A DNA stretch of 64,000 nucleotides from Squalus acanthias (GCA_030390025.1 CM059449.1:13702001-13766000), one strand, 5' to 3'; counted from the first letter of the stretch, positions 22,544 through 62,668 are shown. Numbers and translations are program-made. Notes: a model not told the origin generated them from the letters alone.

Positions 22544-22627
22544 TTACTGCCTGTTCCTTCTTGTCTGTGGTGCACGTTTACTCTTCATCTGAACTTCGTT
22601 ACCGTGACAATGAAGGTAACTATCTTC
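22544..22627 (-). CDS. Gene A putative terminal exon (EDSYLHCHGNEVQMKSKRAPQTRRNRQ*)
   Basis: Acceptor atgttcttgcttcaaatcag|, phase 0 matching exon 6, 27 codons then TAA. No nearby poly(A) signal identified, so less certain. Confidence 0.55.
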   Translation of the reverse strand, partial: EDSYLHCHGNEVQMKSKRAPQTRRNRQ

Positions 22628-22809
22628 CTGATTTGAAGCAAGAACATGAACATTACGTTGGCTAGCATCAAGGTAGAAGGAAGGCATTTTTTCCCCCACT
22701 TAATTTTCTACAGCAAGCATTTATTTCATAACCATTGCTTTCTTTCCTTCAGACCAGTCCTAAACTTGTTTCGACCCAGAAATTATGCTGTGCAAAATTA
22801 GGTTTTCGT

Positions 22810-23080
22810 AAGGCACCACCATTGGCGGCCGTGCCTTCAGCTGCGAAGGACCGAAGCTCTGGAATTCCCTGCCTAAACCATTCCACCTCGCTACCTCTCT
22901 TTCCTCCTTTAAGATGCTCCTTAAAACCTGCCTCTTTGACAAAGCTTTTAGTCATCTTCCCGAATATTTCCTTATGAGGTTCGGTGTCAAATTTTGTTTG
23001 ATAATCGCTCCCGTGAAGCGCCTTGGGACGTTTTACTACGTCAAAGGCGCTATATAAATGCAAGTTGTTGTTGTTGTTGC
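22810..23080 (+). mobile_element. L2 LINE 3' end
   Basis: ggcggccgtgccttcagc...ctctggaattccctgcctaa...gcgctatataaatgcaag followed by a (gtt)n tail. Confidence 0.75.
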
Positions 23081-24389
23081 AAGTGTAAAATTTACAGTTA
23101 TTACACCCTGAGGAAAACGAGTTTCGATGGGAGGCGGTCCCCGGAGTCTATGATGTTTACGGAGTGAGGATGCAGAGAGCAGGAATAGGACAAGGTATGG
23201 AGGACTGAGACATGGAAGATCATAGGGCCAGTGTCAGTATGAATAAAATGGGGGGGGGGAACTTAAAAGGTTGCCACGGTGAAGGAGAGACAGGTAGAAA
23301 AAGATTCATATTAGTGTATTGCTAGATTACATTGTAGAGCCACAGTTACCCTGCACTGCAGGTCTCACTTCCAGGCATACACAGAGTTGCTCTCTTTAGA
23401 AAGCTTCCAAAGGAGAATCTTTGCTTTGTAAACATTTTAGATAAAACGCTTTAAAAGAAAGTGCCCAAGAGCTCCATATAACTTCCTGGGTACTTCGCAA
23501 AGCAAATATCACTCCACCGGGATTTACGCTCTATGCAGTGCCAAACATAACACTCGCTAATCTAGCTCAAGCCCTCACTCTGGATTGGCAGCACGGGTAT
23601 AATGTTGTGCCAAACAGAAACCAGGGCTCAGCATGCCAATAATTGTGCCATCGATGCTCGTTAATTAAAACCCACACGATTAATTGGTCAGATTAAGGAG
23701 CACACAGCAGTCTCTAGAATCGTTATTCTGTATTTTCGAGGCAGGAATCAGTGCCCAAATTGCGAGCTAAGGCCACAAAATAGATGGGGAGTGCTGTGTT
23801 GGAAATCACTGTCTGATTCGTGCAGTGCGCAAGCTTCCTGCTGGCATTCTAGGCCAACGTAAAGAGTTGTCACAGGAGAACTTTGGAGAACTGCATTCAA
23901 AAAGTGAAAGTAATTTAAATAAGGTACTTGGGATCTAAGAAGGACGAATAACACTTTGCATTGGTAGTGCATTGGTCTCCACGTGGAATGACTGCAGTGA
24001 GCTGGAGGTCTTAAAAGAATCGTCGCTTTTTTGTATCTTCTTTTCATTTTCACTTTTTCAGTACCGTAATGTTACTGGGTTTTATTATTGGTTTCATGTT
24101 GCTATTAATTACCTGTCATTATTTTTTTGCATTTTTAATTGTAGTTTGTTTTTTTTAATATCAGAATACATTGGGAATGTAATAGCAAGGTATCTGAAGA
24201 GTCTCTCGAAAGCCTATTGCAATTGAAGCATTTACAAGATATCAGTTTAACAGCGAAAGCTTTAAAAAGGGGGACCACATATCAAGAGACTGAATATAAA
24301 TACTGTTATGGGAGTTCTGGGAGCAACACGGCATCGAAATACAATCTGAAGACTCCCATGGATGTTACCATATTAAGGTACAGTTAATA

Positions 24390-24910
24390 ATGGGTGCACA
24401 GTTCTGGTCTCCTTCTTACAAAAATGATACCGAGGCACTGGAGAAGTTGCAAAAAGGATTTACGAGGGTGATACCAAAACTGAGAGGTTATAACTATCGG
24501 GAAAGATTGAACAGGCTGGGGATTTTTTCTCTGGAAAAGACAAGGCTGAGAGGTAACCAAATAGATGCTTTAAAATGATGATGGGTTCGATAGTGTAGAC
24601 ATAGAGAAGATGTTTCCACTTGTGGGGAGCCTACAACTAGGGGCCATAAATATAAGATAGTCACTAATAAATACAATAAGGAATTCAGGAGAAACTTCTA
24701 TACACAGAGAAAGGTAAGAACGTGGATCTACCACAAGGAGTAGTTGAGGTTAATAGCATAGATGCCTTTAAGGGGAAACTAGGTAAGTACATGAGGGAGA
24801 AAGGAATAGAAGGATATGCTGATAAGGTGAGATAAAGCCGAGTGGGCTCCAGTGGAGCATAAACACCGGCATAGACCAGTTGGGCTGAACAGCTTGTTTC
24901 TGTGCTGTAA
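24390..24910 (+). mobile_element. CR1 3' fragment
   Basis: QFWSPSYKND...LEKLQKGFTRVIP. Confidence 0.85.
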
Positions 24911-24914
24911 TGTG

Positions 24915-25660
24915 ACTGAACCAGACTGTTTTCAATCTTGGCATCCTATTTGCCCCTGAACTGAGCTTCTGACCCCATATCCTCTCCAACACCAAGACCG
25001 CCTAATTCCACCTCCGTAACATCACCCATCTCTGCCCCTGCCACAGCTCATCTGCTGCTGAAATCCTCATCCATACATTTCTTACCTCTAGACTTGACTA
25101 TTCCAATGCTCTCATGGCCGGCCTCCCATCTTCCACCCTACATAAACTTGAGCTCATCCAAAACTGCTGCCCATATCTTAATTCGCAGCAAGTTGCGCCC
25201 ACCCATCACCCCCGGTGCTCGCTGACCTATATTAGATCCCGGTCCGGCAACACCTCGATTTTAAAATTCGCATCCTTGTTTCCAAATCCCTCCATGGTCT
25301 CGCCCCTTCCAATCTCAGTAACCTCCTCCAGCCCTACAACCCTCCGAGATCTCTGCACTCCTCCAATTCTGGCCTCTTGCGCATCCCCGATTGTCTTCAT
25401 TCCAACATTGCCGGCCGTGCCTTAAGCTGCCTAGGCCCTAGGCTCTGGAATTACCCACCCCTTTCCTAAACCTCTCTCTCTCTCTCTCTTCCTTTAAAAA
25501 GGTTCTTAAAACCTGCCTCGTTGACCAAGCTTTTGGTAAACTGCCCTAATATCTGCTTATGTGGCTCGGTGTCAAATGTTGTTTGATAACGCTCTTGTGA
25601 AGCGCCTTGGTACGTTTCACTATGTTAAATGCGCTACATAAATGCAAGTTGTTGTTGTGA
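24915..25660 (+). mobile_element. L2 LINE 3' fragment
   Basis: SRLDYSNALMAGLPSSTLHKLELIQN-type sequence; same (gtt)n tail as 22810-23080. Confidence 0.82.
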
Positions 25661-26253
25661 AAGAAGTGTACCATTGACAAAAAAATAGGCAGCCGAGCTG
25701 GAGTGGCTGAGTAAGGACAAGTGCCATTGCAGCTCATGGCACAGCCGAGAGTCAGGTGTAAAAATACAACATATACAAGGTCTGTTTTGGAACGTCAATG
25801 TGATGCCAGCGGTGTATCACATGGTTGCTCTACGATGCATCAGTCAGCATCGCCAGCGCTAACATTTCATCCCTTTGTCAATAGCAATGACGGCATGATG
25901 TGACTCATCAATGTCACTGCATTATAGCATTTTCCACTGTGCCGGGATCATTGACGGCAGCCAAGTAACCATCTGCACATTAGGCTTCGACTCGCCCTCA
26001 TGCAACCCACCGCTTCCTCATCATCAACTGTACTCTGTGACACAACTTGTGCTACCTCCTCAGCTTCTGCCAGGATGTGTGTTGCGGTGCTGGTGCTTGC
26101 AAACGTTGCTGGGAAAGATGTCTTGTTTTGGGCTACTGGCAGTACTGTCAGTACTTTCTCTCCCGGTTTGCAATGGCAACAAAAAATGTTAGAATGCTGC
26201 TCCCAAAATACATCTGTAAAGAATGCATGCATTGCGCGGGGGGTGGGGGGGGG

Positions 26254-26407
26254 GGGCAATTTTAACCCAATCCGCCGATCGGGAAACTGACGGGATCGAG
26301 TGGCAATGCTTGTTTTACGTCCCGTACGAATATTGGGCTGGGCGAGAAACTGGTGTTTCCATTCGATCCCGTGATTTCCCGCCCGGCGAGTTGGATTAAA
26401 ATTGCCC
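26254..26407. mobile_element. About 150-bp hairpin MITE
   Basis: Imperfect TIRs of about 30 bp: gggcaattttaacccaatccgcc / ggcgagttggattaaaattgccc. Confidence 0.7.
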
Positions 26408-26652
26408 TACCGTGTGATAGCTGTGCGGTTGTGTGTATGCCTATGTGACAGTGGCTAAGAAGAAGATAAGACATAACAACAGCATAATGCTGTGCTTCAG
26501 ATTGGGGCAAGGCGGTATTACATCTTTCTCTAAGGGGTACGTGTAACTTCTGAGTCCTCCTCCAGGTCAGCTCTTTCCCCCTGTATCGTCTGCCATCTTG
26601 CAGAGAAATAGCGTGGACGTGTTGAAGGAACACGCACACAGCAATAGGCATC

Positions 26653-27440
26653 GGGGCAGAAAGTCGGGTCCCCACGGGTGAGTACGCGCTGTGTTCTCAC
26701 CCGGAGGGCCACCGGAAGTGCCGGTTTCGCGCATGCACTGCGCATGCACGTGAAACCGGTACTTCCGGTCTCGTGAAGGAAGGGATTCGAGAGTCAAACG
26801 CTTGCGCCGTAGAGGCAGCGAACTTCCGGGTTTTTTTTACCGGTTTTCCCATGAGGGTAAGTCCCTGGCAGCTGCAAGGCCTGCTTTTAACAAGGTAAGT
26901 AGTGAATTAAGTTAAATTAAAGCATTTTTTCCACAGGTTTATTATTTTTAAATACTTTAAAGAAAGGTAAGTTTATTTTTAGCTCCGTTAAAAACAGTAA
27001 TTAATTTTTTCAAAAATTTAAATTATTGTTTAAAATAGTTATTTTATGTAATTTATAGTAATTTTAAAAATGTGATTTAAAAAATTTTTTTTTGAAGTTT
27101 TAGTTAGGTTTTGGGGCCGATCTCTATTCATAGATTTCACAGGTCTTCCTGTCAAATCTATGAATGGAGATTCCCTGCTCCGATTGGCTCCCCATGGCCC
27201 AAGGCTAAAGCGATCAAGGGATATGGGGAGAAAGCAGCGACAGGGTTGTGAATTTGGATGATCAGCCATGATCTCATTAAATGGCAGAGCAGGCTTGAGG
27301 GGCCGAATGGCCTACTCCTGCTCCTAGCAGGCCCAGGATCGGAATCCCACGCGGGCCCAGAGCACAACGGCAGGCGCGCTATGTAAGTGCACCTGCTATG
27401 CTTGCACCCGCGGAAAGCCTCCGACCCGAATTTCTGTCCC
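26653..27440. mobile_element. Non-autonomous DNA transposon, PIF/Harbinger-like, with a nested CR1 3' tail
   Basis: Termini ggggcagaaagtcgggtc / gacccgaatttctgtccc, 3-bp TSD ATC; CR1 3'-end fragment at about 27200-27325. Confidence 0.75.
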
Positions 27441-28519
27441 ATCATGTCCAACCTACAGTCCGCCCTGTGCGCTGGCAAAAACCCGTAAATGATGCAATTA
27501 TTTCTGCCCTTTGAAATTGCTAGTCCGCCAAAGGTTTCCATTGTAATTTGCACTTTGAATGTGTATACTCTTGATCCGCCGGTATGAGAGTGTAAAAATA
27601 GACAGAGTTGTAGGGTTGTGTTACTGATTGTAGGATGGCATTCGGTGTTTTAAGGTAAAATAAGTTGTAACGTCACTGCGGGCGAGGAATGGAACTTTAA
27701 TCTTATTTTCATTATGAAGTAATTTCTACAGATTGGCAAAATAATATCTTCAAACGAGCGCGTTATTTCTACCCCCCATTCCACGTTGTGAAGCATATTG
27801 GCACCTCTACATGAAAGGAGCGACATAATTACATGTTGTGGTCAAAAGTAAGATGATGAAATAAGCAGTAAGATTCCACTCAACGTTTCTGTCTACTTTT
27901 TAAAAGAACCACAGAAATTAAGAGTGACCGTTTAGACTTTTGTGAACGGAAGCTCTTGCTGGAATGCTTTCTATTGGCAGATTCCAGCAGCAGAATGTAT
28001 TTTTTATCAACAACTATTTAAATCATGACTCCAAGTAGTCGGAATTTTGCAGAGACTTCGCTTTCAAATGGGGCAGAAAAATCGGGCGAAGTGCGCTATT
28101 ACCCGTTCAAGGTTAAAATTACCCCCCATTTTGTTTGAACGTGCTGGCCGTGCCATCGTGTATGTTGAGAGCACAAAAACATATAGAAATTACAAGCTGT
28201 GACTACTGGAAATTTGAAAGTGGAAGAGAGGCGAATGACCTGAAACCTGCTTTCTGGTTCTATCTCCTTTTGCGATTTTGTATTGTCTACCTTTTATTTC
28301 AACTAAAAACACGTTTTATGGTATTTTGCTTTGATCATACATTGTTCAGCTATCCCTGCACGTCAAATCGCTATCATTCCAACTGTTTTACTTGATGCAT
28401 TTTTGATAATTATTTTGATCTAATCAATACATTTTGCTCCAAAATCTGCACGTGAAATTGTCTCCTATTTTGTACATGACACACAACACCTGCAACTAAA
28501 TAGACAGACATGCATTTAC

Positions 28520-28563
28520 CTGATGATTGGGAGGATTTGGTAGTTTGGTTCTGGGTGGCAATT
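28520..28563 (-). CDS. Gene A exon 6: proline-rich cytoplasmic exon (ELPPRTKLPNPPNHQ)
   Basis: Acceptor ttttattcctgttttgtcccaaacag|, donor CAG|gtaaat; 44 nt, phase 1-0; forms PELPPR across the junction. Confidence 0.7.
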
Positions 28564-31500: not shown

Positions 31501-31959
31501 ACAGTCGAATATTGTCAGCGTCATTTTTAATTGACTTCGCACCACATCTGAAACTACTACGGTGCTGGACGCCTCCGAATGGTTATAACTATGTGGAAGA
31601 CAGTTGTAAGTGAGTCTGAGTGAGACTGAGATCTTAAAATACCTGTGTTTTGATGGTAATTAGAGGAACTGCGTTTAAAAGAACTAACGTCTTTTGAATT
31701 TTAAAGCCATAACTAGTCATGAAAGAGCATCCCTGAAGCCCCTCTATGCTGCCTCAGTGACTGATATATTAAAACAAACCATTGCTGCTGAACCTTTTCA
31801 GGGGCACCAACCTTTTAAAAGGCCTCCCCTTTTTCAGTTCATACTCATTAAATATCTGATTAAATTCGAACCTGTGTGGAGAGCTATTTATTTTTAGGTT
31901 GCAAGGATGGCGCGGGCCCCATCTTGTTTTTTTTCTCTCTCTCTCTCTCACATGGCAGC

Positions 31960-32285
31960 TGTCGATCATTCTGCCATTTACATTTCATCTAGAGTCATCT
32001 TTTGTTTCTTAACTTGTCCCATTATCATCTCCTTTTCCCTTGCACCATCATCCCTTTTGTCTCTTAATCTCTCCTGCCTTCCGCCCTATCACAGACCTTC
32101 CCTTTTGTTCTTTCCTCCCCTCCCCCCTTTCCCTGCTCCTACACTTGCTTAAAAACCTGTTCCATCTTCAACTTTTTCCAGCCTGACGAAGGGTCATCGA
32201 CCTGAAACGTTAACTCTTGTTTCTCACTCTCCACAGATGCTGCCTGACCTGCTGAATATTTCCAGCATTTTCTGTTTTTATTGCG
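31960..32285 (+). mobile_element. Solo Penelope-like terminal repeat in a gene A intron
   Basis: Same repeat as 10700-10930, with ctgacgaagggtcatcgacctgaaacgttaact. Confidence 0.75.
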
Positions 32286-32634
32286 GAAGTCCCTTGTTGC
32301 TCTGAGGAAGGAGATGCCAACCTACCCGACTAATTCTCTTACTAATGGCAGTTAGTCGTTCCAGATGGATTGATATTTGTCTGGCAGAATGATGCACCCA
32401 AAACTTTAATTTTTCAAACAACAGCATGTTTATATGTTCTATTTATGCTTGAGCTTTCCAATCCTGGGTTATCGGAAATAGTTAAATCGAAGCAATACAA
32501 GAACACACATACAAGCACAGTTATACAAGCACACACACACACACACACACACATATGCACACGAGCATTCTTCATCTTAATACAAGCAGTTCACAGACTC
32601 TTAAGCAAGCCAAATAAAGGTGTGAACTACTTAC

Positions 32635-32669
32635 CCGGCTCTTTTGCCAAATCGAAAGAAGAACATTCT
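32635..32669 (-). CDS. Gene A exon 5: 35-nt cytoplasmic exon (RECSSFDLAKEP)
   Basis: Acceptor tttcttctcattctacag|, donor G|gtaagt; phase 2-1, consistent with both neighbours. Confidence 0.75.
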
Positions 32670-32791: not shown

Positions 32792-32810
32792 CTGACAAGC
32801 AAAGCGTAAG
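32792..32810 (-). CDS. Gene A exon 4: 19-nt cytoplasmic microexon (AYALLV-R)
   Basis: Strong acceptor ttctcttcttctttacag| and donor AG|gtaagc; phase 1-2 links exons 3 and 5 without a stop. Confidence 0.75.
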
Positions 32811-33740: not shown

Positions 33741-33924
33741 TGAAAATCATTCGTTTCATAAGGTTCCGAATTCATTGCAAAATGGAAAATCTATTCAATC
33801 TTCACCACAACATTGCAAAAAGAAAATGGTATCGTATTATGATGATTTATTGTTATTGTGAGGCATGAGTTAGAAAATGTGACGATTCCATAAGATGGCT
33901 ACCATGTTTTAATATTTAAAATAC

Positions 33925-34059
33925 CTTTATTTCGTTGAACAAGGACTGTGATCACTATGAGCAGAGTCACAGTAATCAGCAATGTCACTCCACCTAACAC
34001 TGCAAGCCAAAACCAATCAAACGGAGAATCAGTTGAAGAGTTTCGTTTGCCACAAGGAT
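33925..34059 (-). CDS. Gene A exon 3: stalk and transmembrane segment
   Basis: Acceptor ttttttctttctacag|, donor G|gtattt, 135 nt, phase 1-1, in frame: HPCGKRNSSTDSPFDWFWLAVLGGVTLLITVTLLIVITVLVQRNK. No charged residue within the TM. Confidence 0.92.
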
Positions 34060-34416
34060 CTGTAGAAAGAAAAAAGCAATAATTAGTTATTTATTCGTAA
34101 GTCTAGCTAGTAAGAACAACAGCAAAGAAAACAGTGATACAAAGAGACGCCGACGGAAATAAATAGGGAGAAAGGCACACAGGCAGAAAGGCAAAGTAAT
34201 ACAAGAAAGATGGACGGGGTGGGAGAGAGACAGAGATAGAGACATGCAGCACCCATGGGCAGAAAGAGTGAGAAAGACAGAGAGGCAGACACTGAGGAGA
34301 GCTGAACAACAACAGAATTACCCATCAGGAAGGAAAGGGTGAAGGAAGCGGTAGAGAGTTTTAAATCTGGAAAAGATATCCCAGTGCCTTAATGTTATAT
34401 TGTTGGGTTCTCTTAC

Positions 34417-34743
34417 GCTTTACGGTAACCGTGGTTCCATTACCGACAGCCTTCCTCTGTCCCATTATTTCAATCTCGCAGTAGTACACGCCAGACTCGC
34501 ATTCTGTCATATTCTTAATTTGGATTGATGCATCTTTCCTCGAATTGAACGCATTCGTGTCGGCCTTTGTCAATCTGTTCTTGTATCTCGGAGAATCGAA
34601 GTCTATGGGATTGTTATCTATTCTCCAGCTGTAGGTACCCAACCCTAGTAATGTAAAGGTGCAATTCAAAATCACACTTTCGCCTTGGAATATTTTAACT
34701 GAAGGGGGGTGTTGCACTACTCCAGATGTAGCAGCCTCCATAC
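34417..34743 (-). CDS. Gene A exon 2: single VJ-type IgV domain, NKp30/NCR3-like
   Basis: Acceptor tttctttgtgcgtccctag|, donor C|gtaaga, 327 nt, phase 1-1. Encodes ...VVQHPPSVKIFQGESVILNCTF...YSWR...PRYKNRL...DASIQIKNMTECESGVYYCEIEIMGQRKAVGNGTTVTVK with B-strand Cys, C-strand Trp, xSGxYYC and a GNGT G strand. It resembles NKp30 as I recall it (PEFRGRL..., C-x-VEVLG...GNGT). Confidence 0.93.
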
Positions 34744-35204: not shown

Positions 35205-35880
35205 AAGAAATCACTAAAAGTTGCGACGCAGGTTAGCAAGGCCATTAAAAAAAGCAAACCAAGCAGTAGGGTTTATTTCTAAAGGTATAGAATTGAAAAG
35301 TAGGGAAGTTATGCTAAACCTGTAACAGAACCTTGGTTAGACCACACTTAGAGTACTGCATACAGTTCTGGTCGCCATATTATAAAAAGGATATAGAGGC
35401 GCTGGAGAGGCCGCAGAGAAGATTTACAAGGTTGATACCAGAAATGCGAGGGTATATATATCAGGAAAGGATGAACAGGCTGGGTTTATTTTCTCTTGAA
35501 AGGAGAAGGCTAAGGGGTGACCTAATAGGGGTCTTTAAAATTATGAAAGGTTTTGATAGAGTGGATACAGAGAGAATGTTTCCACTTGTGGGGAAGAGCA
35601 CAACTAGAGGCCATCAATATAAGATACTCACCAAGAAATCCAAAAGGGAATTCAGAAGAAACTTCTTTACCCACAGGGAATGGTTGAAATAAATAGTATA
35701 GATGCATTTAAAGGGAGACGATACAAGCAAATGAGGAAGAAGGGAATAGAGGGTTATTCTGATAGATTTAGATGAGGAAAGACGAGAGGAGGCTCGAGTG
35801 GAGCATAAACGCCGGCATGGACTGGTTGGGCCGAATGTCCTGTTTCTGTGCCGTATATCCTATGTAATCCTATGTAAATT
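35205..35880 (+). mobile_element. CR1 3' fragment in gene A intron 1
   Basis: VRPHLEYCIQFWSPYYKKDI; (atcctatgta)n tail. Confidence 0.9.
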
Positions 35881-37124: not shown

Positions 37125-37640
37125 ACTTGCCATAGAGGGAGTGCAGCGAAGGTTCACCAGAATGATTCCTGGGATGGCAGGACTGTCGTATGAGGAGAGA
37201 TTGGGTCGACTTGGCCTGTATTCACTAGAGTTTAGAAGAATGAGAGGGGATCTCATTGAAACGTATAAAATTCTGACAGGGCTAGACAGACTGGATGCAG
37301 GGAGGATGTTTCCCCTGTCTGGGGGGTCTAGAACAAGGGGGCACAGTCTCAGGATACGGGGTAGGACATTTAGGACTGAGATGAGGAGAAATGTCTTCAC
37401 TCAGAGGGTGGTGAACCTGTGGAATTCTCTACCACAGAAGGCTGTGGAGGCCAAGTCACTGAATATATTTAAGAAGGAGATAGATAGATTTCTAGACACA
37501 AAAGGCATCAAGGGGTATGAGGAGAGAGCGGGAATATGGTATTGAGATACCGGATCAGCCATGATCATATTGAATGGCGGAGCAGGCTCGAAGGGCCGAA
37601 TGGCCTACTCCTGCTCCTATTTTTCCATGTTTCTATTTTT
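37125..37640 (+). mobile_element. CR1 3' fragment (near-identical to 58420-59005)
   Basis: QRRFTRMIPGMAGLSYEERLGRLGLYSLE. Confidence 0.9.
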
Positions 37641-52654: not shown

Positions 52655-55600
52655 CACACACACCACAACCTCCCCCCCCCCCCCCCCCACCACACACACA
52701 CACAGCCGCACACACACACACACACACACACCGCCCCCCACACACACACACCAGCCCACACACACAAACACACACCACCACTCCCCCACACAGACACACA
52801 CCGCCCCCCCATACACACACCCCAGCCCACACACACAAACACACACCACCACTTCCCCACACAGACACACACCGCCATCCCACACACACACCCCAGCACA
52901 CACATCGCCCCCCACACACACACACACACACACACCCCCCACACACACACAGCCCCAGCCTCACACACACACACACAGACCGCTCACCCCCACAGACACA
53001 CACATACATACCGTCACTCCACACACACACACGCACCGCCCTCTACCACACACACACACACACCGCCCCCCCCCCACACACACACCGCCCCCCCCACACA
53101 CACACACAGCCCCCCCCCCACACACACACACCGCCCCCCACACACACACACACACTGCCCCCCCCCACACACACACTACCGCACCCCCACACATACACAC
53201 CGAACCCCCCCCACACACACACACACCGCCACCCCCCCACGCACACACACCGCCAGCCCACACACACCCCGCCCCCCCACACACACACACCGCCCCCCCC
53301 ACACACACACACACAGCCCCCCCCACACACACACACCACCCCCCACACACACACACCGCCCCCCCCACACACACACTTTCCACCCCCACACACACACACA
53401 CCCACACCGCACACACACACACCACACACACACCGCCCCCCCCACACACATACATACACACCGACCCCCCATACACACACACCGCCCCTCGCACACACAC
53501 ACACACCGCTCCCCCCCACACACACATGCACCGCCCCCCCCACACACACACACACTGCCTACCCCACACACACACACCGCCCCCCACACACACACAAACC
53601 GCTCCCCCCACACACACACACACACCCCACACACACACACCGCCCCCCCACACACACACACACTGCCCCTCCCACACACACACACACCGCCCCCCCACAC
53701 ACCGCCCCCCCACACACACACAAACTCACACCACCCCCCTCACACACACAAACTCACACCGCCCCCCCCCTCCACACACGCACACACACACTGCCCCCCA
53801 CACACACACAAAATCACACCGCCCCCCCACACACACACACCGCCCCCCCACACACACACTGCCCCCCCACACACAAAAACTCACAGCGCATCCCCCCACA
53901 CACGCACCCCCCCCCACACACACACACACACACACACTGCCCCCCCACACACACAAACTCACACCGCACCCCCCACTCACACACACATACCGCTCCCCCC
54001 AACACACACATCGCCCCTCCACACACACACACACCGCCCCCCCACACACACACGCCGCTCCCCCCAAACACACACACCGCCCCCACACACACACACACCG
54101 CCCCCCACACACATACAAACCGCCCTCCCCCACACACACACACCGCCCCCCCCACACACACACACACACACCGCCCCCCACACACACACACCAGCCCACA
54201 CACACAAACACACACCACCACTCCCCCACACAGACACACACCGCCCCCCCCATACACACACCCCAGCCCACACACACAAACACACACCACCACTTCCCCA
54301 CACAGACACACACCGCCACTCCACACACACACCCCAGCACACACACAAACACACACAAACATCGCCCCCCACACACACACACACACACACACCCCACACA
54401 CACACAGCCCCAGCCTCACACACACACACACAGACCGCTCACCCCCACAGACACACACATACATACCGTCACTCCACACACACACACACGCACCGCCCTC
54501 TACCACACACACACACACACCGCCCCCCCCCACACACACACCGCCCCCCCACACACACACACAGCCCCCCCACACACACACACACCGCCCCCCACACACA
54601 CACACACACTGCCCCCTCCCCACACACACACTACCGCACCCCCACACATACACACCGAACCCCCCCCACACACACACACATCGCCACCCCCCCCACACAC
54701 ACACACCGCCAGCCCACACACACCCCGCCCCCCCACACACACACACCGCCCCCCCCCACACACACACACACAGCCCCCCCCCACACACACACACCACCCC
54801 CCACACACACACACCGCCCCCCCCACACACACACTTTCCACCCCCACACACACACCCACACCGCACACACACACACACACACACACACATCCCCCCCACA
54901 CACATACATACACACCGACCCCCCATACACACACACCGCCCCCCACACACACACACCGCCCCCCACACTCACACACACACCGCTCCCCCCCACACACACA
55001 TGCACCGCCCCCCCCCACACACACACACACTGCCTACCCCACACACACACACCGCCCCCCCACACACACACAAACCGCTCCCCCCCACACACACACACCC
55101 ACACACACACACCGCCCCCCCCACACACACACACACTGCCCCTCCCACACACACACACACCGCCCCCCCACACACCGCCCCCCCACACACACACAAACTC
55201 ACACCACCCCCCTCACACACACAAACTCACACCGCCCCCCCCCCCACACACGCACACACACACTGCCCCCCACACACACACAAACTCACACCGCCCCCCC
55301 ACACACACACACCGCCCCCCCACACACACACTGCCCCCCCACACACAAAAACTCACAGCGCATCCCCCCACACACACACACCCCCCCCACACACACACAC
55401 ACACACACTGCCCCCCCACACACACAAACTCACACCGCACCCCCCACTCACACACACATACCGCTCCCCCCAACACACACATCGCCCCTCCACACACACA
55501 CACACCGCACCCCCACACACACACGCCGCTCCCCCCAAACACACACACCGCCCCCACACACACACACACCGCCCCCCACACACATACAAACCGCCCTCCC

Positions 55601-57310
55601 CCACACACACACACCGCCCCCCCACACACACACACCGCCCCCCCCCCACACACACACACACACACCGCTCCTCGCACACACACACACACTCCACCCCCCT
55701 CACACACACACACTCCACCCCCCCCCACACACACACTCCACCCCCCCCCACACACACACACCGCTCCCCCCCCACACACACACACACCGACTCCCCGCAC
55801 ACACACACTCCGCCCCCCCCCACAGACACACAGACACACCGCCCCCTCACACGCACACACACCGCCCCCCCCCCGCACACACACTGCCCCCATCACACAC
55901 ACACACACTCCGCCCCCCCAACAGACAGTCACACACACCGCTCCCCCCCCACACACACACTCCGTCCCCCCACACATTCACACACACCGCCCCCCCCCAC
56001 ACACACACACACCACCCCCCCCACACACACACACCACCCCCCCCACACACACACACACCGCACCCCCACACACACACTACCACCCCACACACAATCACAC
56101 CGCTCTCCTTCCCACACACATACCGCCCCCCGCAGAGACACACACACTACTCCCACCCCCACGCACACACACCACCCCCCTCACACACACAAACCACCCC
56201 CCCCACACACACACACCACCCCCCCCACACACACACACCACCCCCCACACACACACACACCGCCCCCCTACACACACACTACCACCCCACACACGATCAC
56301 ACCGCCCTCCCTCCCACACACATACCGCCCCCCGCAGAGACACACACACCACTCCCCCCCCCACACACACACACCACCCCCCTCACACACAGACACACTG
56401 CCCCCCCACACACACACACCGCCCCCCCCACACACACCACCCCACCACACACACACACACACCGCCCCCCACACACACACACACTGCCCCCCGACACACA
56501 CACACCAACCCCCCACACACACACACACCACCACCCCCCTCCCCACACACACACCACCCCCCCCACACACACACACCATCCCCCACACTCATACACACCG
56601 CCCCCCTCCACACACATACACACACTGCCCACACACACACACATACACCGCCCCCCTCACACACACACCGGCCCCCCCACACACTCAGAAACCACCCCCC
56701 ACAGACGCACACACACACACCGCCCCCCCCCCACCCCCCCCACACCCCCCCCCCACACACACACACCACCCCCCCACACACGCACACTGCCCCCCCCACA
56801 CACACACACACCGCCCCCACCACACACACACACACACACCGCCACCCCCCCACACACACACACCGCCCCCACCACACACACACACACACACCGCACCCCC
56901 CCCCCCACACACACACACCACCCCCACCACACACACACACACACTGGCCTCTACACGCACACACACCGCCCCCCACACACACACACACACCACCCCCCAC
57001 ACACACACACTGCCCCCCCACACACACACACTGCCCCCCACACACAAAGACAATGCCCCCCCACACACACCATCCCAAACACACACACACACATTCCTCG
57101 CCACGACACACGCACATTCCCCCCGACCCCACCACACACACACCGACACACCCACACACACTTACACCCACACACACACGCACACATCGTCCAACACTCA
57201 CACACTCACACATTGCACCACGTCCCCCGCTACCCCCGCACAGTCAGCGTCTCACACACACCACCTCCCCCACCTCCCCGCACCCCTCCGCCCACACACA
57301 CACAAACAAT
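52655..57310. repeat. 4.6-kb C/A-rich compound repeat with higher-order duplication
   Basis: Units of roughly (CA)n-CCG-Cn. Diagnostic variant blocks recur about 1.44-1.47 kb apart (ccagcccaca at 52751 and 54191; cagcgcatcc near 53884 and 55357). Confidence 0.95.
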
Positions 57311-58419
57311 AGCCAAAGCACATCCACACAGAGGGAAGGTTAAGGTCGACCATAGACAACGGGCTCCAGGCAGCAGGATAGCGATAACCCAGTCCAGTGC
57401 TCTAACCGGCTAGTCAGTGACCCCCTTCCTAGCTTAGCCACCAGTACCATCCTAAACACTGAAATCTGCAATCAGTTTACACAAGCAGGCTAGCAGACTT
57501 ATATCACATCGTACTCCTGCAAATGTCCTGTACACATGTTGTAAAATTATTTAGAAAGAAACTAAACTAGGTGTTTGGCGTTGGGTTTCAGTCTTTCCTC
57601 AGACGTGGTCCTTGGGTCTCAGTCTTCTAGTGGGCACATCATTGAAGATGGGTAGAGATCTGTTCATTTAGGATTTTAGGGAAGCATCTTCAAGCGGGCA
57701 CATTGATCTGAGTTTAAGTAAAGGAACGTGGGAATAAAATCAATAATATTTTGGTTTGAAATAATTGGCGATAGAGGGCAGAATGAGAGACCCTACTGAT
57801 GGCGCAGGATCTTGGGATATTCCGCCCATATGGGTTGATGACAATGTGGCAAGAGAGGGAAGTCAACAGCGTTTCACGGTATGAATTGGACCAATCTTTA
57901 AAGACGATTAAAATTTCAGAGCGATATTTACTGTCCTCACAGCACAGGTGCTATTTCTGATCAACGCTCTTCCCTACCAACTGAAACTGGCGGGGTGGGG
58001 GTAGGGAGGTAATCTTTACTCACCTGGCCGGGCGGAATACACCGGATCGGGTGGAAAGCCGGTTTTGCACGCTGCCCAAAATTAATCTACATTTCCTTCA
58101 ATGCAGAGCAAAATCGGGCGCATGTACAGCCAGCGGTGCACCCCTAGACCCGCCAGTTTCCCAACAGGCGGTTTAGGTTAAAATTGCACCTTCTCTCTAC
58201 ACTTATCAACCCTTAAAGCAGTTTTAAATCGATTAACTGTTCGCATGGTACCAGCGCTGTTGGGGAAACACGCCACGCATTCGCCATGAAAGCTGTTCAG
58301 CTTCTCAAGTCGTATAAAGCACGAAACGTTGTTGTATGATGGGAAGAACATTCGAATATCAGGGCATTACTAAGTCATTCACGTTTTTTAAACATGTAAT
58401 TAACGGAATTCTGAGATAC

Positions 58420-59005
58420 AGGGTCTTGGTGAGACCACACCTGGAGTACTGTGTGCAGTTTTGGTCTCCTTACCTAAGAAAGGATATACTTGCCATAGAG
58501 GGAGTGAAGCGAAGGTTCACCAGACTGGTTCCTGAGATGGCAGGACTGTCGTATGAGGAGAGATTGGGTCGACTAGGCCTGTATTCACTAGAGTTTAGAA
58601 GAATGAGAAGGGATCTCATTGAAACGTATAAAAGTCTGACAGGGCTAGACAGACTGGATGCAGGGAGGATATTTCCCCTGGCTGGGGGTCTAGAACAAGG
58701 GGTCACAGTCTCAGGATACGGGGTAGGACATATAGGACTGAGATGAGGAGAAATTTCTTCATTCAGAGGCTGGTGAACCTGTGGAATTCTCTACCACAGA
58801 AGGCTGTGGAGGCCAAGTCACTGAATATATTTAAGAAGGAGATAGATAGATTTCTAGACACAAAAGGCGTCAAGGGGTATGGGGAGAGAGCGGGAATATG
58901 GTATTGAGATAAAGGATCAGCCATGATCATATTGAATGGCGGAGCAGGCTCGAAGGGCCGAAGGGCCTACTCCTGCTCCTATTTTTACATGTTGCTATGT
59001 TTCTA
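58420..59005 (+). mobile_element. CR1 3' fragment just downstream of the gene B stop
   Basis: VLVRPHLEYCVQFWSPYLRKDI. Confidence 0.9.
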
Positions 59006-59250
59006 TATTCTCCAGAATGCAATTTCAGAAAGCCAAAATGATGCAAAGTTACCGATGGAGTACAAGACATCAAGGGGGAGGTGAAATTCGTCTTCTGCAG
59101 TAGCACAACGTGGGCGATAGCTCATCTTCTGCTCCGTCCGATTTCATTCTCCATTGGAATAGAAAATCGGGTGGACTGAATACGGGCTGCCCATGCTCTA
59201 TAACTCCACTGCCGCTTTCACCCCCACTGTCTTTCCGCACTGTTTAAAAT

Positions 59251-59460
59251 TTATCTTGCCCCCCTGAGGTCACGAGAATTGACGTATCTGAACTCAGGTC
59301 GTCGAGGTTCGGAGAACACGCATGTACTCAGTGAGTTTACTGTGGCGTATTCTACGTGATCTGCTCTCCTGTTCACTCTGTCCTCCTTTCTCCCTTGCTG
59401 TCTATTCAACTGGGCGTAATGCAGAGACTCCTCCTGAGCAACGCCATGATCGGGAAGTGC
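59251..59460 (-). CDS. Gene B terminal exon: ITIM + ITSM-like + YxN tail
   Basis: Acceptor attttaatgcttttag|, phase 0, 70 codons including TAA: ALPDHGVAQEESLHYAQLNRQQGRKEDRVNRRADHVEYATVNSLSTCVFSEPRRPEFRYVNSRDLRGAR*. This frame is absent from the ORF track. Confidence 0.88.
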   Translation of the reverse strand, partial: ALPDHGVAQEESLHYAQLNRQQGRKEDRVNRRADHVEYATVNSLSTCVFSEPRRPEFRYVNSRDLRGAR

Positions 59461-60429
59461 CTAAAAGCATTAAAATATTAAGCTGATCAAGAAACAACAA
59501 TTGCCAGCATTGAAACTCTGTGCTTTTTTGAGATTTCAGCCCAATTGCCGACGTTCTCTTCCACACTGTACTAAAATCAAGACACATGGCAGTTTCTCCT
59601 GATTTAACTCATGCATTCCAGGAACTCGGAGTGGGGAAACTCCTTAAATTAATGAACCTCCCCTGAATCTAAAAAACTCAGTCTTGTTTCATCTAATCAA
59701 GTATTTTTAATTTGTCTGCTCTTCTCTGCCACTTCAGCATCGGTGGGCCCATGCCCTTCTGCAAGGTTACCAAAATCCCAAGACCACAAATATGCTGTCA
59801 ATCAAATGTTTCTAATGAGACAAGTAAAGGATTCCGTATAAAAGAACCCCAGTTATAAATCGTCGGGAGCGCCAGTAAGTTCATCTTTCTGTGTTTAGGA
59901 AGGTGTTGGATGTATGGAATAGTTTCCACTTCCATAGCATGGGGCAGTTAATGGTCGCGCACAACATAGGGCTGGATGCAAAAGTACAGCTTCCTCGACT
60001 CTATAAATGGGCCATATCAAGGAGCTCAAACGAGCGCTCCTGTGCCAGAATTGCAACATTTTTCGACTGTCCACTGGTCTGAGTCAAGAGCGATCTGAGT
60101 GAGATTGTCAGTTTGATGCAAATCTAACGCCAATTTTCTGACCGAGGCAAATATAGACTAGGAATTGGGTTGGGGTGCATTGAACCCGTTTCAATGCGAA
60201 CAAGTACAAACGGAAATGATTCGGGGGTGATTAGCTTTCGGCGGTAGCGCAAAATGGGCGATATCAAATCGGCCGCCCGTCTTACACCTCGCCGGATTTT
60301 GTTTTCCATTGACTGCAGGGCTGACAGTTCGAAATCGCCGTTTTCCGCTACCGCCCAAGCCCAATTTTATCCCCTAGATTTGCATCCCGTTAGATTGAAT
60401 TGATTTGAATTCAAATCGTAATGCAGTAG

Positions 60430-61170
60430 GAGGGTGGTTGCAGTTTGGAACTTTCTGCAATTGATGCTGGGTCAATTGTTAATTTTAAATCTAAGATTGA
60501 CAGATTTTTGTCAACCAAAGGTATTGAGGGACACGGGGCAAAGGCGGGTATATGGAGTTTGGTCACAGATCAGCCATGATCTCATTGAATGGCGGTGCAG
60601 GCTCGAGGGGCTGAATGGCCTCCTCCTGTACCTATGCTCCTAAGCACAGAAGGAGGCCATTCGGCTCATCGTGACTGTGTCGGCTCTTTCAAAGAGTTAC
60701 CAAATTTGTCCTCTTTCTCTGTCCTTTCTCCGGAGCCCTACAAATGTTCCCCCTTCAAGCATTTATCCAATTCCCTTTCGATATTTATTATTGAATCTGC
60801 TTCCACCACCCGTTCAGGCAGTGCAATTTGGATCATAAAAATGTTCTGCGTAAAAAAAAATCTCCTCATCTCCACTCTGGTACTTTTGCCAATTACTTTA
60901 AATCTGCGTCCTCTGGTTACCGACCCTCCTGCCACTGGAAACAGTTTCTTTACTCTATCAAAACCCTTCATGATTTGGAACATCTCTATTATATCTCCCC
61001 TTAACCTTCTCTGCTCAAAGGAGAACAACCCCAGTTTTTCTAGTTTCTCAACGTAACTGCAGTCCTGTATCCCTGGTGCCATTCCAGTAAGTCTCCTTTG
61101 CACCCACTCTAAGGCCTTGACATCCTTCCTAAAGTATGGTGCCCATAATTGAATGCAATACACCAGCTGA
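60430..61170. mobile_element. Two CR1 3' fragments joined tail to tail (plus 60430-60640, minus 60641-61170)
   Basis: Plus-strand 3' UTR abuts the minus-strand ORF YCIQLWAPYFRKDVKALE. Confidence 0.8.
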
Positions 61171-61323
61171 NNNNNNNNNNNNNNNNNNNNNNNNNNNNNN
61201 NNNNNNNNNNNNNNNNNNNNNNNNNNNNNNNNNNNNNNNNNNNNNNNNNNNNNNNNNNNNNNNNNNNNNNNNNNNNNNNNNNNNNNNNNNNNNNNNNNNN
61301 NNNNNNNNNNNNNNNNNNNNNNN
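61171..61323. other. Run of N within a gene B intron
   Basis: 153 N. Confidence 0.99.
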
Positions 61324-61449
61324 TTTATTGACGGCTTTATGCTTCAGATAATGATGATTTTTCACCCCTGAGGCCTTAAAATATTGGAACCGTAAAATCC
61401 TGTTACAACCGTCTATCTGTTGACATGTATAACATTTGATAGTTCTTAC

Positions 61450-61514
61450 TTGTGTTGTTGCCTGTACATCGCTGGAACCTGTGGGAATGATGATCGTGCC
61501 AGACGCATGAAATG
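61450..61514 (-). CDS. Gene B cytoplasmic exon (TFHASGTIIIPTGSSDVQATTQ)
   Basis: Acceptor aatttaattttttcag|, donor CAA|gtaaga; 65 nt, phase 1-0 bridging the TM exon and the ITIM exon. An internal cccacag acceptor in the same phase is also possible. Confidence 0.7.
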
Positions 61515-62279
61515 CTGAAAAAATTAAATTTGTCATATAACAGGAATGTTAATGCAGCTACTTAGATAGCAATATGAATGAACAAGAAATCTCATCTCGG
61601 ATCTCAGATAATAACTGTAACAAAAAATTGAATGATTTCCCTTCCTATTAAACTCTACCGAACAAAAAAGAAATTAAGAAAAAATAAAATTGATAAATAA
61701 CCTCTGATTCTTCCCCTGTCAATTATAGCATCTTCACCATGTTATGGCAATTCAGTAACAAAGTGTTGTAACTCAGTGACATCCCCTAGCCTGCTCCCCA
61801 GTGGCATCATCAACCTTTGAAAGTTTGAACAAAATGGTTTATTTAATTCTCCAGGAGTCACAATCCCTTGTCGTTCTGCTTTAGAATAACACCCAAATCA
61901 TCAGTTTGTCGTTAAATGCTTAGAAATGGTGCATAGCAATTACTCTGGTCGCTATGTGTAGCGGTGTGGTGAGTTCGTTACGATGTCCTCTGGTCCCCAC
62001 TTCTAGCAAAATCGTAAATGCATTTTAATCGAATTATGTTCAATCCCCTCAACAAAGGGTGCGGCAGAATGGTTCTGACAGTTGACCTCATGACCCCTGC
62101 ACCCAGGAAGAGGAAAAAAAGCACCTCAGGTTCTGTTAGGAACTGTCCCCATGTTGATGCCTGTCGAGGTTAGTTGGGCACCCTGCGGACCTTCTTCTCA
62201 AGGGTCCCATATGGCCAATAGTCACTTGGACATGTTACCAAACAAATCCTTCCGGGCTGAGGAACACTATCCCTACATC

Positions 62280-62482
62280 TGTGAGAAGTCGCACAACACC
62301 AGGTTATAGTCCAACAGCTTTATTTGAAATCACAAGCTTTCGGAGCTGCTGCTCCCTCGTCAGGTGAAGGAGCAGCGCTCCGAAAGCTTGTGATTTCAAA
62401 TAAAGCTGTTGGACTATAACCTGGTGTTGTGCGACTTCTCACATTTGTCCACCCCAGTCCAACACCGGCATCTCCACATCAT
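62280..62482. mobile_element. Short hairpin Penelope-like insertion
   Basis: Inverted repeat 62280-62443 plus a short tail; flanked by a 12-bp duplication tatccctacatc (62268-62279, 62483-62494). Confidence 0.8.
62330..62367 (-). ncRNA. Minimal hammerhead ribozyme motif (second family)
   Basis: Minus strand reads tcac-CTGACGA-g-ggagc(agca)gctcc-GAAA-gc-TT-gtga. Confidence 0.7.
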
Positions 62483-62548
62483 TATCCCTACATCGTCAAC
62501 GCTTTCAGAAGAGGGCAATATTTAATTTGGTACAACGACAATACAAAC

Positions 62549-62668
62549 TTTTATTGCCCCAAATCAGTCGAAATGTCAGAAATACGATTAACACAGCTAT
62601 CAACGCCAGCGCGCCCAGCAAAATCGGTGTTATGTCGGTCCTCGCATTCTTCGTTTCCTTTGTGCGGC
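62549..62668 (-). CDS. Gene B transmembrane exon (ectodomain exons presumably beyond window end)
   Basis: Acceptor ttcattctatttatttcag|, donor A|gtttgt; 120 nt, phase 1-1: RTKETKNARTDITPILLGALALIAVLIVFLTFRLIWGNK. Ends in NK plus one nucleotide, as the gene A TM exon does. Confidence 0.85.

What the first reader, a model, noticed from the sequence alone, without database searches (positions are those of the whole stretch)
22544..62668. Tandem IgV receptor cluster with contrasting tails: candidate paired activating/inhibitory system
Seen: two same-strand type I membrane genes about 20 kb apart, whose TM exons are both phase 1-1 and end in ...N-K plus one nucleotide. Gene A has an NKp30-like VJ domain and a Pro-rich tail without a canonical ITIM; gene B has a dual-ITIM tail. 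Known: paired receptors (CD28/CTLA-4, SIRP, CD300) use related ectodomains with opposing signalling, and NKp30/CD28-family receptors bind B7-family ligands. Inference: A and B are paralogues forming a costimulatory/checkpoint-like pair in a cartilaginous fish.
Basis: partly seen in the sequence, partly recalled or inferred. Interest (0 to 1): 0.85.

Follow-up and report, generated by a model that had tools for sequence, protein, structure and literature searches.

The report
Two tandem shark NKp30-like receptor genes
Two neighbouring immune-receptor genes of the shark NKp30-like family sit here, one complete with an unusually conserved tail of unknown function and one with a classic double inhibitory motif, but nothing shows that they work as an on/off pair.

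Summary
Both genes are on the minus strand. Gene A (39305-22544) is complete: 7 exons, 234 codons, and every internal junction is AG/GT. Its V exon matches human NKp30 best, by sequence and by predicted fold. Orthologues of about 235 aa exist in 15 named shark and ray species. Only the 3' part of gene B lies in the window: the TM exon, a 29-nt exon and an exon with two ITIMs 23 residues apart, all in frame. B orthologues exist in Heptranchias and Pristiophorus. Their V domains are distant relatives of A's (28-31% identity; hhalign 97.7%).

So A and B are old tandem paralogues. The "paired activating/inhibitory" reading is only half met. B looks inhibitory, but A has no charged TM residue, ITAM or known costimulatory motif, and its "Pro-rich" stretch is not conserved. 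No assembly gap touches an exon.

Two further points. A's membrane-proximal tail is 89% identical between sharks and rays. Skipping B's 29-nt exon removes the ITIMs, as predicted isoform X2 does in Heptranchias.

Three small RNA(?) runs did not cover B's exons. The scan holds 32 notes naming NKp30 elsewhere in this genome.

The parts
39245..39305 (-). Gene A exon 1: ATG and leader, ends in phase 1, donor gt
   Evidence: Read. tblastn with shark orthologues P0001-P0003 gives 9-14 of 21 identical. Exon table.
34417..34743 (-). Gene A exon 2: single V exon with a fused J-like end (GNGTTVTVK), 327 nt, phase 1-1
   Evidence: V-set E 4.6e-10; human NKp30 best, E 7.7e-9; model pLDDT 90.2; top 4 fold matches are NKp30.
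33925..34059 (-). Gene A exon 3: stalk with Cys, uncharged TM segment, ends RNK plus g; 135 nt, phase 1-1
   Evidence: (66% identity to Heptranchias P0001).
32792..32810 (-). Gene A exon 4: 19-nt micro-exon (AYALLV), phase 1 to 2
   Evidence: (7 of 7 identical to 11 of the 16 orthologue models compared; no hit reported for the other 5).
32635..32669 (-). Gene A exon 5: 35-nt micro-exon (ECSSFDLAKEP), phase 2 to 1
28520..28563 (-). Gene A exon 6: 44 nt (LPPRTKLPNPPNHQ), the 'Pro-rich' patch, phase 1 to 0
   Evidence: The Pro content is not conserved in orthologues.
22544..22627 (-). Gene A exon 7: last coding exon (EDSYLHCHGNEV...), stop at 22546-22544
   Evidence: (74% identity to P0001).
62549..62668 (-). 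Gene B TM exon: 120 nt, phase 1-1, ends GNK plus a. The first two bases, gc, fit the stalk Cys codon of the orthologues.
   Evidence: 79.5% identity to Pristiophorus P0004. 77% identity to Heptranchias P0006.
61450..61478 (-). Gene B 29-nt exon (SSDVQATTQ), phase 1 to 0. It sets the ITIM frame; skipping it shifts the frame.
   Evidence: It matches the 10-residue stretch between the TM and ITIM parts of P0004 and P0006. It is absent from isoform X2, P0005.
59251..59460 (-). Gene B ITIM exon: 69 codons plus stop, with LHYAQL and VEYATV 23 residues apart
   Evidence: Matches: P0004, E 1.3e-10; 66% identity; 58% identity to P0006.
61171..61323 (.). Assembly gap inside gene B's intron, between the 29-nt exon and the ITIM exon
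   Evidence: It lies 127 nt from the nearest exon edge. It was not bridged.
44360..47035 (.). Two assembly gaps (44360-45244 and 46884-47035) in the A-B intergenic stretch
   Evidence: They lie 5,055 and 7,579 nt from the nearest exon edge.

Best explanation
The region holds two tandem, same-strand members of the elasmobranch NKp30/NCR3-like family. These are single V domains with a fused J-like strand, a stalk cysteine and an uncharged transmembrane segment.

Gene A is complete, and its orthologues are found across sharks and rays. Its V domain is the part most like human NKp30. Its 60-residue tail has no ITIM, ITAM or ITSM. The tail does carry a membrane-proximal block (AYALLVRECSSFD.AKEP) that is almost unchanged between sharks and rays, so A probably signals or traffics through a partner that is not yet known (inferred).

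Gene B lies upstream on the same strand, and its leader and V exon are beyond the window. It ends in two ITIMs 23 residues apart. By analogy with other ITIM receptors, these would recruit SHP-1/SHP-2 after tyrosine phosphorylation and damp activation (inferred from the motifs, not shown).

A 29-nt exon sets the ITIM reading frame. Leaving it out gives a short tail without ITIMs, as in the predicted isoform X2 of Heptranchias.

A and B are old paralogues, about 30% identical in the V domain. Each is kept separately in other sharks. They are not a recently split activating/inhibitory couple.
For: Gene A:
- All 7 exons are in frame with AG/GT sites, 705 nt including the stop.
- Each exon matches the shark proteins P0001-P0003.
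- 18 proteins with E<=0.001 were found among 8000 scored candidates. They come from 8 shark and 7 ray species, and two are named 'natural cytotoxicity triggering receptor 3-like' by NCBI.
- NKp30 is the best solved match by sequence, E 7.7e-9 against 6.3e-7 for SIRPa. It is also best by fold: ranks 1-4, E 1e-10, TM 0.80.
- Shark-versus-ray identity is 45% in V, 22% in the stalk, 58% in the TM and 89% in the proximal tail.

Gene B:
- The exons are in phase.
- An exhaustive search with the ITIM exon found 1 protein, P0004 of Pristiophorus japonicus, E 1.3e-10.
- P0004 is a fused model that runs B V-TM-29nt-ITIM and then A V-TM.
- Heptranchias has XP_067830066.1 with the ITIMs and XP_067830067.1 without the 29-nt exon. 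Both are on the same 21.08-Mb contig as the A orthologue XP_067830063/64.

A versus B: BLASTP gives 28% identity over 141 aa, E 2e-8. hhalign gives 97.7% probability.
Against: - There is no RNA support in this species. Runs X20-X22 (about 100-120 million letters each, RNA only by guess) had zero depth on all three B exons and covered only repeats.
- B's V exon is outside the window, and an unchecked scan note says it is one nucleotide out of phase.
- The B-type V domain is below Pfam's V-set cut-off (19.8 against 26 bits). Its best solved matches are antibody VH domains, not NKp30. Its AlphaFold model was poor, pLDDT 53.
- With a 4-sequence profile, NKp30 leads SIRPa and TCR alpha by only 2-3 bits, and two multi-Ig proteins score higher overall.
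- A second individual's contig differs at 6 sites in the 210-nt ITIM exon. All 6 change a residue or a stop, and one turns the first ITIM's L into F.
- B-type proteins were found only in two squalomorph sharks.
Confidence: 0.78

Rival explanations
1. A and B are a functional costimulatory/checkpoint pair, like CD28/CTLA-4. Their related ectodomains see the same B7-like ligand; A gives a positive signal and B a negative one.
For: - They are tandem paralogues on one strand, with the order kept in Pristiophorus and Heptranchias.
- V identity of about 30% is in the range I recall for CD28/CTLA-4.
- Both have a stalk cysteine: A, the B orthologues.
- B has two ITIMs.
- A's tail is strongly conserved, so it does something.
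Against: - A has no charged TM residue, no ITAM, and no YxNx or YxxM motif.
- The Pro-rich patch is not conserved.
- A's CDR3-like loop has no proline motif of the kind given for the CD28 family in PMC11599192 (passages read).
- No ligand or expression data exist.
- B-type was found in only 2 other species, against 15 for A-type. A is therefore kept in many species where no B partner is annotated.
Confidence: 0.15
2. Gene B is itself the switch. Including or skipping its 29-nt exon gives an ITIM-bearing or an ITIM-less receptor with the same ectodomain. This is the CEACAM1-L/S principle (recalled), so the 'pair' is two isoforms of one gene.
For: - The exon is 29 nt, not a multiple of 3.
- In the window, skipping it gives a 19-codon alternative tail that ends in a stop.
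- Heptranchias has both forms as predicted isoforms, X1 (217 aa, ITIMs) and X2 (184 aa, none).
- The alternative frame of the window aligns with X2's tail: 61% over 23 aa, including the stop.
Against: - The isoforms are computer predictions whose RNA support I could not see.
- No RNA covered the exons here.
- The alternative-frame similarity follows from DNA conservation alone.
- Both splice sites of the 29-nt exon look ordinary (ag, gtaaga).
Confidence: 0.3
3. Gene B is a decaying or null copy in this genome. The intact-looking 3' exons are a remnant.
For: - An unchecked scan note says its V exon is one nucleotide out of phase.
- Three RNA(?) runs gave zero depth.
- All 6 differences in the second individual's ITIM exon change a residue or a stop. 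The exon differs more than the flanking intron: 6 of 210 against 5 of 1024 sites, Fisher p 0.005.
Against: - The three exons in the window are open, with canonical splice sites.
- The second allele keeps an open frame of 72 codons and both tyrosines.
- The TM exon is 77-80% identical to the orthologues.
- The Heptranchias orthologue has a short V that starts at ESQSV. A 'phase problem' seen by eye may therefore be an internal acceptor.
Confidence: 0.15

Closest known systems
NKp30 / NCR3 and the shark NCR3 gene family. Kinlein et al. 2021, Immunogenetics 73:333, was seen only in reference lists; its content is recalled. Flajnik et al. 2012 was likewise seen only in reference lists.
   Same: - A single V domain encoded by one exon with a fused J-like strand.
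- A's V is closest to human NKp30 by sequence and by fold.
- NCBI names two A orthologues NCR3-like.
- Many such genes are noted in this genome. This fits the multi-subtype, MHC-linked family that I recall from the 2021 paper.
   Different: - There is no charged TM residue for CD3-zeta/FcR-gamma coupling. The tails are long: A's is conserved and of unknown type, B's has a double ITIM.
- Whether A or B equals one of the eight published nurse-shark subtypes could not be checked.
CD28 / CTLA-4 (tandem paralogues with opposite signs)
   Same: - Neighbouring single-V type I genes.
- Low ectodomain identity.
- A stalk cysteine.
- Tyrosine motifs in the tails.
   Different: - There is no proline motif in the CDR3-like loop (criterion from PMC11599192).
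- A lacks YxNx and YxxM.
- B uses two ITIMs, which CTLA-4 does not (recalled).
Classical paired receptors (KIR, SIRP, CD300, PIR)
   Same: The genes are clustered and one partner has ITIMs.
   Different: - The ectodomains are about 30% identical rather than nearly identical.
- There is no partner with a short tail and a charged TM residue.
CEACAM1-L/S (recalled): a frame-shifting cassette exon decides whether the ITIM tail is made
   Same: An exon of a length not divisible by 3 lies just upstream of the ITIM exon. Long and short forms are predicted in Heptranchias.
   Different: The family is unrelated, and both isoforms remain unproven as RNA.
PD-1 / BTLA (ITIM plus ITSM)
   Same: A single V domain, an uncharged TM segment and two tail tyrosine motifs.
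   Different: - The second motif is V-E-Y-A-T-V, an ITIM and not TxYxx[VI].
- The YVNS that follows it is absent from the Heptranchias orthologue.

Membership tests
NKp30/NCR3-like VJ receptors | One V-set domain encoded by a single exon that ends in a J-like GxGTx(L/V)xV strand | tested here: met
   - A: the exon 34743-34417 ends in GNGTTVTVK, and Pfam V-set gives E 4.6e-10. The J consensus is as quoted in PMC11599192.
- B orthologues: only NGTTLEV or NGNTLEI, with the first G lost.
NKp30/NCR3-like VJ receptors | Closer to NKp30 than to other V domains | tested here: met
   - A: NKp30 is first by phmmer (E 7.7e-9; next is SIRPa at 6.3e-7) and by Foldseek (ranks 1-4). The margin is small with the 4-sequence profile.
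- B-type: not met against the PDB, but it is closest to A-type.
NKp30/NCR3-like VJ receptors | A charged TM residue that couples to CD3-zeta/FcR-gamma (mammalian NKp30; recalled) | tested here: not met
   The TM cores of A and B have no D, E, K or R. The only basic residues sit at the cytoplasmic edge.
NKp30/NCR3-like VJ receptors | Linkage to the MHC | not testable with these tools
   No MHC gene lies in the window. Only an unchecked scan note places a nearby locus in the class III region.
NKp30/NCR3-like VJ receptors | Binding of B7H6 or a B7-family ligand | not testable with these tools
   This needs protein binding assays.
ITIM inhibitory receptors (gene B) | [SIVL]xYxx[ILV] in the cytoplasmic tail, in frame with the TM segment | tested here: met
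   LHYAQL and VEYATV. The frame runs through the 29-nt exon.
ITIM inhibitory receptors (gene B) | Two motifs about 20-30 residues apart, conserved in orthologues | tested here: met
   The tyrosines are 23 residues apart (translation). Both tyrosines and the +3 residues are kept in P0004 and P0006. A second individual has F at +3 of the first motif.
ITIM inhibitory receptors (gene B) | Tyrosine phosphorylation and SHP-1/SHP-2 recruitment | not testable with these tools
   This needs biochemistry.
Classical paired activating/inhibitory receptors | Near-identical ectodomains in the two partners | tested here: not met
   28% identity (Heptranchias B against A). 29-31% identity (B orthologues against the window's A V exon). 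B's own V exon is outside the window.
Classical paired activating/inhibitory receptors | An activating partner with a short tail and a charged TM residue, or an ITAM | tested here: not met
   A has an uncharged TM segment and a 60-residue tail with no YxxL/I-x6-8-YxxL/I.
CD28/CTLA-4 family | A proline motif in the CDR3 loop (PPP or E-I-P, as given in PMC11599192) | tested here: not met
   A's loop between YYC and GNGT holds no Pro. The criterion was read in passages only. That paper's alignments are in supplements that I could not open.
Splice-switched ITIM receptors (CEACAM1-L/S type) | A frame-shifting cassette exon upstream of the ITIM exon, with both forms expressed | tested here: inconclusive
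   The exon is 29 nt. Predicted X1 and X2 exist in Heptranchias. No RNA lies over the exons here.

The most novel reading that the evidence does not exclude
Two linked ideas that the data do not exclude.

(1) Gene A is the conserved core NKp30 of elasmobranchs. On this reading it signals through a so far undescribed tail module: the near-invariant AYALLVRECSSFD.AKEP block, together with the conserved Cys and His residues and a second tyrosine further on. That would be an ancestral way for NKp30 to signal without CD3-zeta/FcR-gamma.

(2) Its upstream neighbour B is an NKp30-family checkpoint whose ITIMs are switched on or off by a 29-nt exon. A and B would share a B7-like ligand, which would make this a CD28/CTLA-4-like pair built from the NKp30 lineage.
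Probability: 0.12. Interest if true: 0.75.

Novelty: new member of a known kind. Interest (0 to 1): 0.4.

Why it matters
NKp30 is, as I recall from the literature, the one natural-killer receptor traceable from sharks to humans. How it signalled before it coupled to CD3-zeta is an open question.

This locus gives a clean, complete gene model for a shark/ray-wide NKp30-like gene. Its tail is better conserved than its ligand-binding domain. Its neighbour is a double-ITIM relative.

That gives concrete things to test: the tail block, the 29-nt exon and possible ligand sharing. It also corrects database names for A orthologues, which read 'uncharacterized' or 'myelin protein zero-like 1'.

It does not by itself show a new kind of system. 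A diverse shark NCR3 family is already in print, and the 'paired' claim lacks its activating half.

Tried and rejected
**Frame of gene B.** I first misread the donor of B's small exon. That made the exon 30 nt and put the ITIMs out of frame, which would have made B a pseudogene or implied a 1-nt insertion. Re-reading base by base showed 29 nt, with the sequence caa|gtaaga at the donor. Everything is then in frame, and I dropped the frameshift idea.

**Alternative acceptor.** An acceptor 36 nt upstream (exon start 61514) would also stay in frame. The orthologues have the short form.

**Terminal micro-exon.** I looked for a small last exon like the end of P0006 downstream of 59250 and found none.

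**Possible V-exon remnant.** The weak hit at 2760-2876 shares only a short patch of about 20 nt with A's V exon in a DNA alignment. I rejected it as unsupported.

**A's tail.** Pfam found nothing beyond the Ig domains. The protein atlas gave no usable hit by features, and its structure rows are meaningless short helices.

**B-type fold.** The AlphaFold model of P0006 had pLDDT 53.1. It was too poor to search, so no fold search was run on it.

**RNA.** The single look-up of sequencing runs and read-laying runs went to gene B. Only repeats were covered in the RNA(?) runs. Gene A's junctions were therefore not tested with reads.

**Papers.** Three papers are not held: PMC8273117 (Kinlein 2021), PMC3709836 (Flajnik 2012) and PMC4594805 (Ohta & Flajnik 2015). 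The searches found no open paper describing signalling tails of shark NKp30-like genes. This covers the held library only. Supplements were not opened.

**Spliced models.** All window searches were exon by exon, and database orthologues stood in for full-length proteins.

Full report
**What is there.** The features lie on the minus strand.

A hydrophobicity scan found two TM-bearing open segments, at 33902-34090 and 62508-62912. Reading the DNA shows that both are exons flanked by ag and gt.
- Gene A's TM exon is 34059-33925, 135 nt. Its in-frame translation ends in RNK, followed by one extra g.
- Gene B's TM exon is 62668-62549, 120 nt. It ends in GNK, followed by one extra a.
Phase 1-1 is the rule for IgSF exons in general, so the phase alone says little.

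**Gene A.** The V exon, 34743-34417, is 327 nt and phase 1-1. It ends in a J-like strand, GNGTTVTVK.
- It scores as a Pfam V-set domain: E 4.6e-10, 40.1 bits, cut-off 26.
- Its best match among solved structures is human NKp30 (E 7.7e-9). SIRP-alpha follows at 6.3e-7 and antibody light chains at about 4e-6.
- A search limited to the V part returned 3 proteins out of 5 candidates, all from sharks, 234-235 aa long and 70-74% identical.
- Laying those proteins on the window recovered all seven exons. The sequence confirmed an ATG, six AG/GT introns, consistent phases and a stop: 705 nt, 234 codons.

A profile of three orthologues then found 18 proteins with E<=0.001 among 8000 scored candidates. 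They come from 8 shark and 7 ray species. NCBI calls two of them 'natural cytotoxicity triggering receptor 3-like', one 'myelin protein zero-like protein 1', and the rest uncharacterized.

An AlphaFold model of the window's V exon, built on a 15-row alignment, reached pLDDT 90.2. Its four best Foldseek matches in the PDB are all human NKp30 (E 1e-10, TM 0.80). SIRP-alpha follows at 6e-9.

One result weakens this. With a 4-sequence profile, NKp30 (36.4 bits) leads SIRP-alpha (34.0) and a TCR alpha chain (33.5) only narrowly, and two multi-Ig proteins have higher whole-chain scores. 'NKp30-like' is therefore the best-supported label, but not by a wide margin.

**Gene A's tail.**
- The TM core has no charged residue.
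- The tail, exons 4-7, is about 60 residues long. It has no ITIM, ITSM or ITAM.
- 'Pro-rich' rests on exon 6, with 5 Pro in 14 full codons. The same stretch has 1-2 Pro in the orthologues, so this is a species quirk.
- What is conserved is the membrane-proximal block encoded by the 19-nt and 35-nt micro-exons. In a 12-species alignment, shark-versus-ray identity is 89% there, against 45% in the V domain, 22% in the stalk and 58% in the TM.
- One tyrosine (in AYALL), one cysteine, and further on a histidine are invariant. A second tyrosine, a second cysteine and another histidine are nearly so.
- I found no family or look-alike for this tail.
- A YxxL four residues after the basic stop-transfer residues could be an endocytic signal. 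The Cys/His set could bind a metal or a partner. Both ideas are guesses.

**Gene B.** An ITIM pattern scan of the minus strand found two matches in one open segment, LHYAQL and VEYATV, at 59338-59424.
- The exon starts right after an ag at 59460, in phase 0. It runs 69 codons to a stop at 59253-59251.
- Between it and the TM exon lies a 29-nt exon, 61478-61450, with ag and gtaaga. This exon carries phase 1 to phase 0, so the three exons read through.
- An exhaustive HMMER search with the 69-residue exon found exactly one protein at E<=0.001. It is a 480-aa model from the sawshark Pristiophorus japonicus, E 1.3e-10.
- That model runs through a V domain, a TM stretch 79.5% identical to B's TM exon, a 10-residue link matching the 29-nt exon, and the double-ITIM stretch (66% identical). 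It then continues straight into an A-type V and TM (71% and 72% identical to gene A).
- It looks like a fused prediction of two neighbouring genes. That shows the same B-then-A order on one strand in the sawshark.
- Searching with its B part found one further protein among 167 candidates, from Heptranchias perlo.
- That protein's cluster holds two predicted isoforms: XP_067830066.1 (217 aa, with the link and both ITIMs) and XP_067830067.1 (184 aa).
- Both sit on the same 21.08-Mb contig as the A orthologue XP_067830063/64 and have neighbouring accession numbers.

**The 29-nt exon as a switch.** The 184-aa isoform lacks the 10-residue link and reads the ITIM exon in another frame, ending without ITIMs. 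The window behaves the same way. Joining the TM exon directly to 59460 gives 19 codons and a stop, and this alternative frame aligns with the Heptranchias X2 tail (61% over 23 aa). I could not see whether the Heptranchias isoforms rest on RNA.

**Are A and B related?** B's own V exon is beyond 64000, and nothing like it lies in 62669-64000. Using orthologues instead:
- Heptranchias B against A gives 28% identity over 141 aa, covering V, stalk and TM up to the shared RNK, with E 2e-8.
- B-type V domains hit the window's A V exon at 29-31% identity.
- A profile-profile comparison gives 97.7% probability, E 1.5e-12, over 95 columns.
- The B-type V is divergent and short. It starts about 15 residues later than A's, is below Pfam's V-set cut-off (19.8 bits), and finds only antibody VH domains weakly in the PDB.

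They are paralogues, but old ones, and each has its own orthologues.

**Gaps.** The three N runs are at 44360-45244, 46884-47035 and 61171-61323. None touches an exon; the nearest exon edges are 5,055, 7,579 and 127 nt away. The first two are intergenic, so the 19,946-nt spacing is approximate. The third is inside B's intron, next to a repeat with very high depth. No contig crossed it. I did not try to fill any gap.

**Reads.** The run search returned DNA runs of 'organism A' and three small runs guessed to be RNA. I laid 59200-62700.
- The RNA(?) runs X20-X22 covered only two repeat blocks, 60370-61188 and 62242-62592. They had zero depth over all three B exons. These runs are small and of unknown tissue, so this does not show silence. 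It does mean that no junction is confirmed.
- A DNA run from another sample (X5) covered the ITIM exon with a contig that differs at 6 sites in the exon, plus a 2-nt insertion near its end. The following 1,024 intron bases differ at 5 sites plus a 1-nt deletion (Fisher p 0.005).
- All six exon differences change the protein or a stop. One replaces the L at +3 of the first ITIM by F.
- The other allele still has an open 72-codon frame and both tyrosines.
- The contig could come from a very recent paralogue rather than an allele.

**Comparison with what is known.**
- The family is known. Shark NKp30/NCR3 genes were reported in 2012, and a diverse, MHC-linked, multi-subtype shark NCR3 family in 2021. 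I saw these two papers only as entries in reference lists, and their content here is recalled.
- Open papers that I read in passages treat NKp30 as a non-rearranging, MHC-linked VJ gene of cartilaginous fish (PMC12227049; PMC10751288).
- The CD28-family survey (PMC11599192, passages) gives proline CDR3 motifs as family marks. A lacks them.
- Classical paired receptors need near-identical ectodomains and a charged-TM partner. Neither condition is met.
- The scan's other first-stage notes name NKp30 32 times in this genome, listed from 188 kb before this window to 1.87 Mb beyond it, several with the same 'paired' idea. These notes are unchecked leads. One says B's V exon is out of phase.

Noticed in passing
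window 62290-62450 and 63790-63995: Two copies of a hairpin-like (self-complementary) repeat lie in gene B's introns. The copy at about 62242-62592 had very high contig depth in DNA and in the RNA(?) runs. No Rfam family reached its gathering score in 59000-64000, so the hammerhead motifs that another scan note mentions are not confirmed at that threshold.
   Followed up: partly
window 52676-57212: A 4.5-kb CA-rich low-complexity array (period 2, or a 48-nt C/A-rich unit, 69-72% matches) lies in the A-B intergenic stretch. It produces long spurious ORFs on both strands.
   Followed up: partly
window 59251-59460 (run X5 contig): A second individual's ITIM exon differs at 6 sites. All 6 change a residue or a stop. 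Two of them (codons 20 and 26) match the Pristiophorus residue. The exon differs more than the adjoining intron. This could reflect gene conversion from a paralogue, diversifying selection or relaxed constraint.
   Followed up: partly
window 39445-39507 (minus strand): A stretch upstream of gene A's ATG matches the 21-residue N-terminal extension of the Cetorhinus model P0007 (62% identity, E 2.5e-8). It may be a conserved 5' leader or an upstream ORF.
   Followed up: no
B orthologues P0004 and P0006 (TM segment), window 62549-62668: The B-type TM segment is identical over 25 residues between Heptranchias and Pristiophorus, while their V domains are much more divergent (55% identity overall). 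The window differs at 3 of those 25 residues. This hints at a specific partner inside the membrane.
   Followed up: no
window 8587-8877, 11652-12543, 15554-16018, 35333-35692, 37141-37545, 49927-51833, 58336-58746, 60738-61163: Many ORF fragments share the same short protein motifs, and one holds a YINDL..FADD stretch. I take them for retroelement (reverse-transcriptase-like) pieces on both strands, filling the introns and the intergenic DNA. This label is my own reading and was not tested.
   Followed up: no
Heptranchias protein P0017 (146 aa): A predicted A-type isoform lacks most of the V domain and joins the early V sequence directly to the stalk.
   Followed up: no
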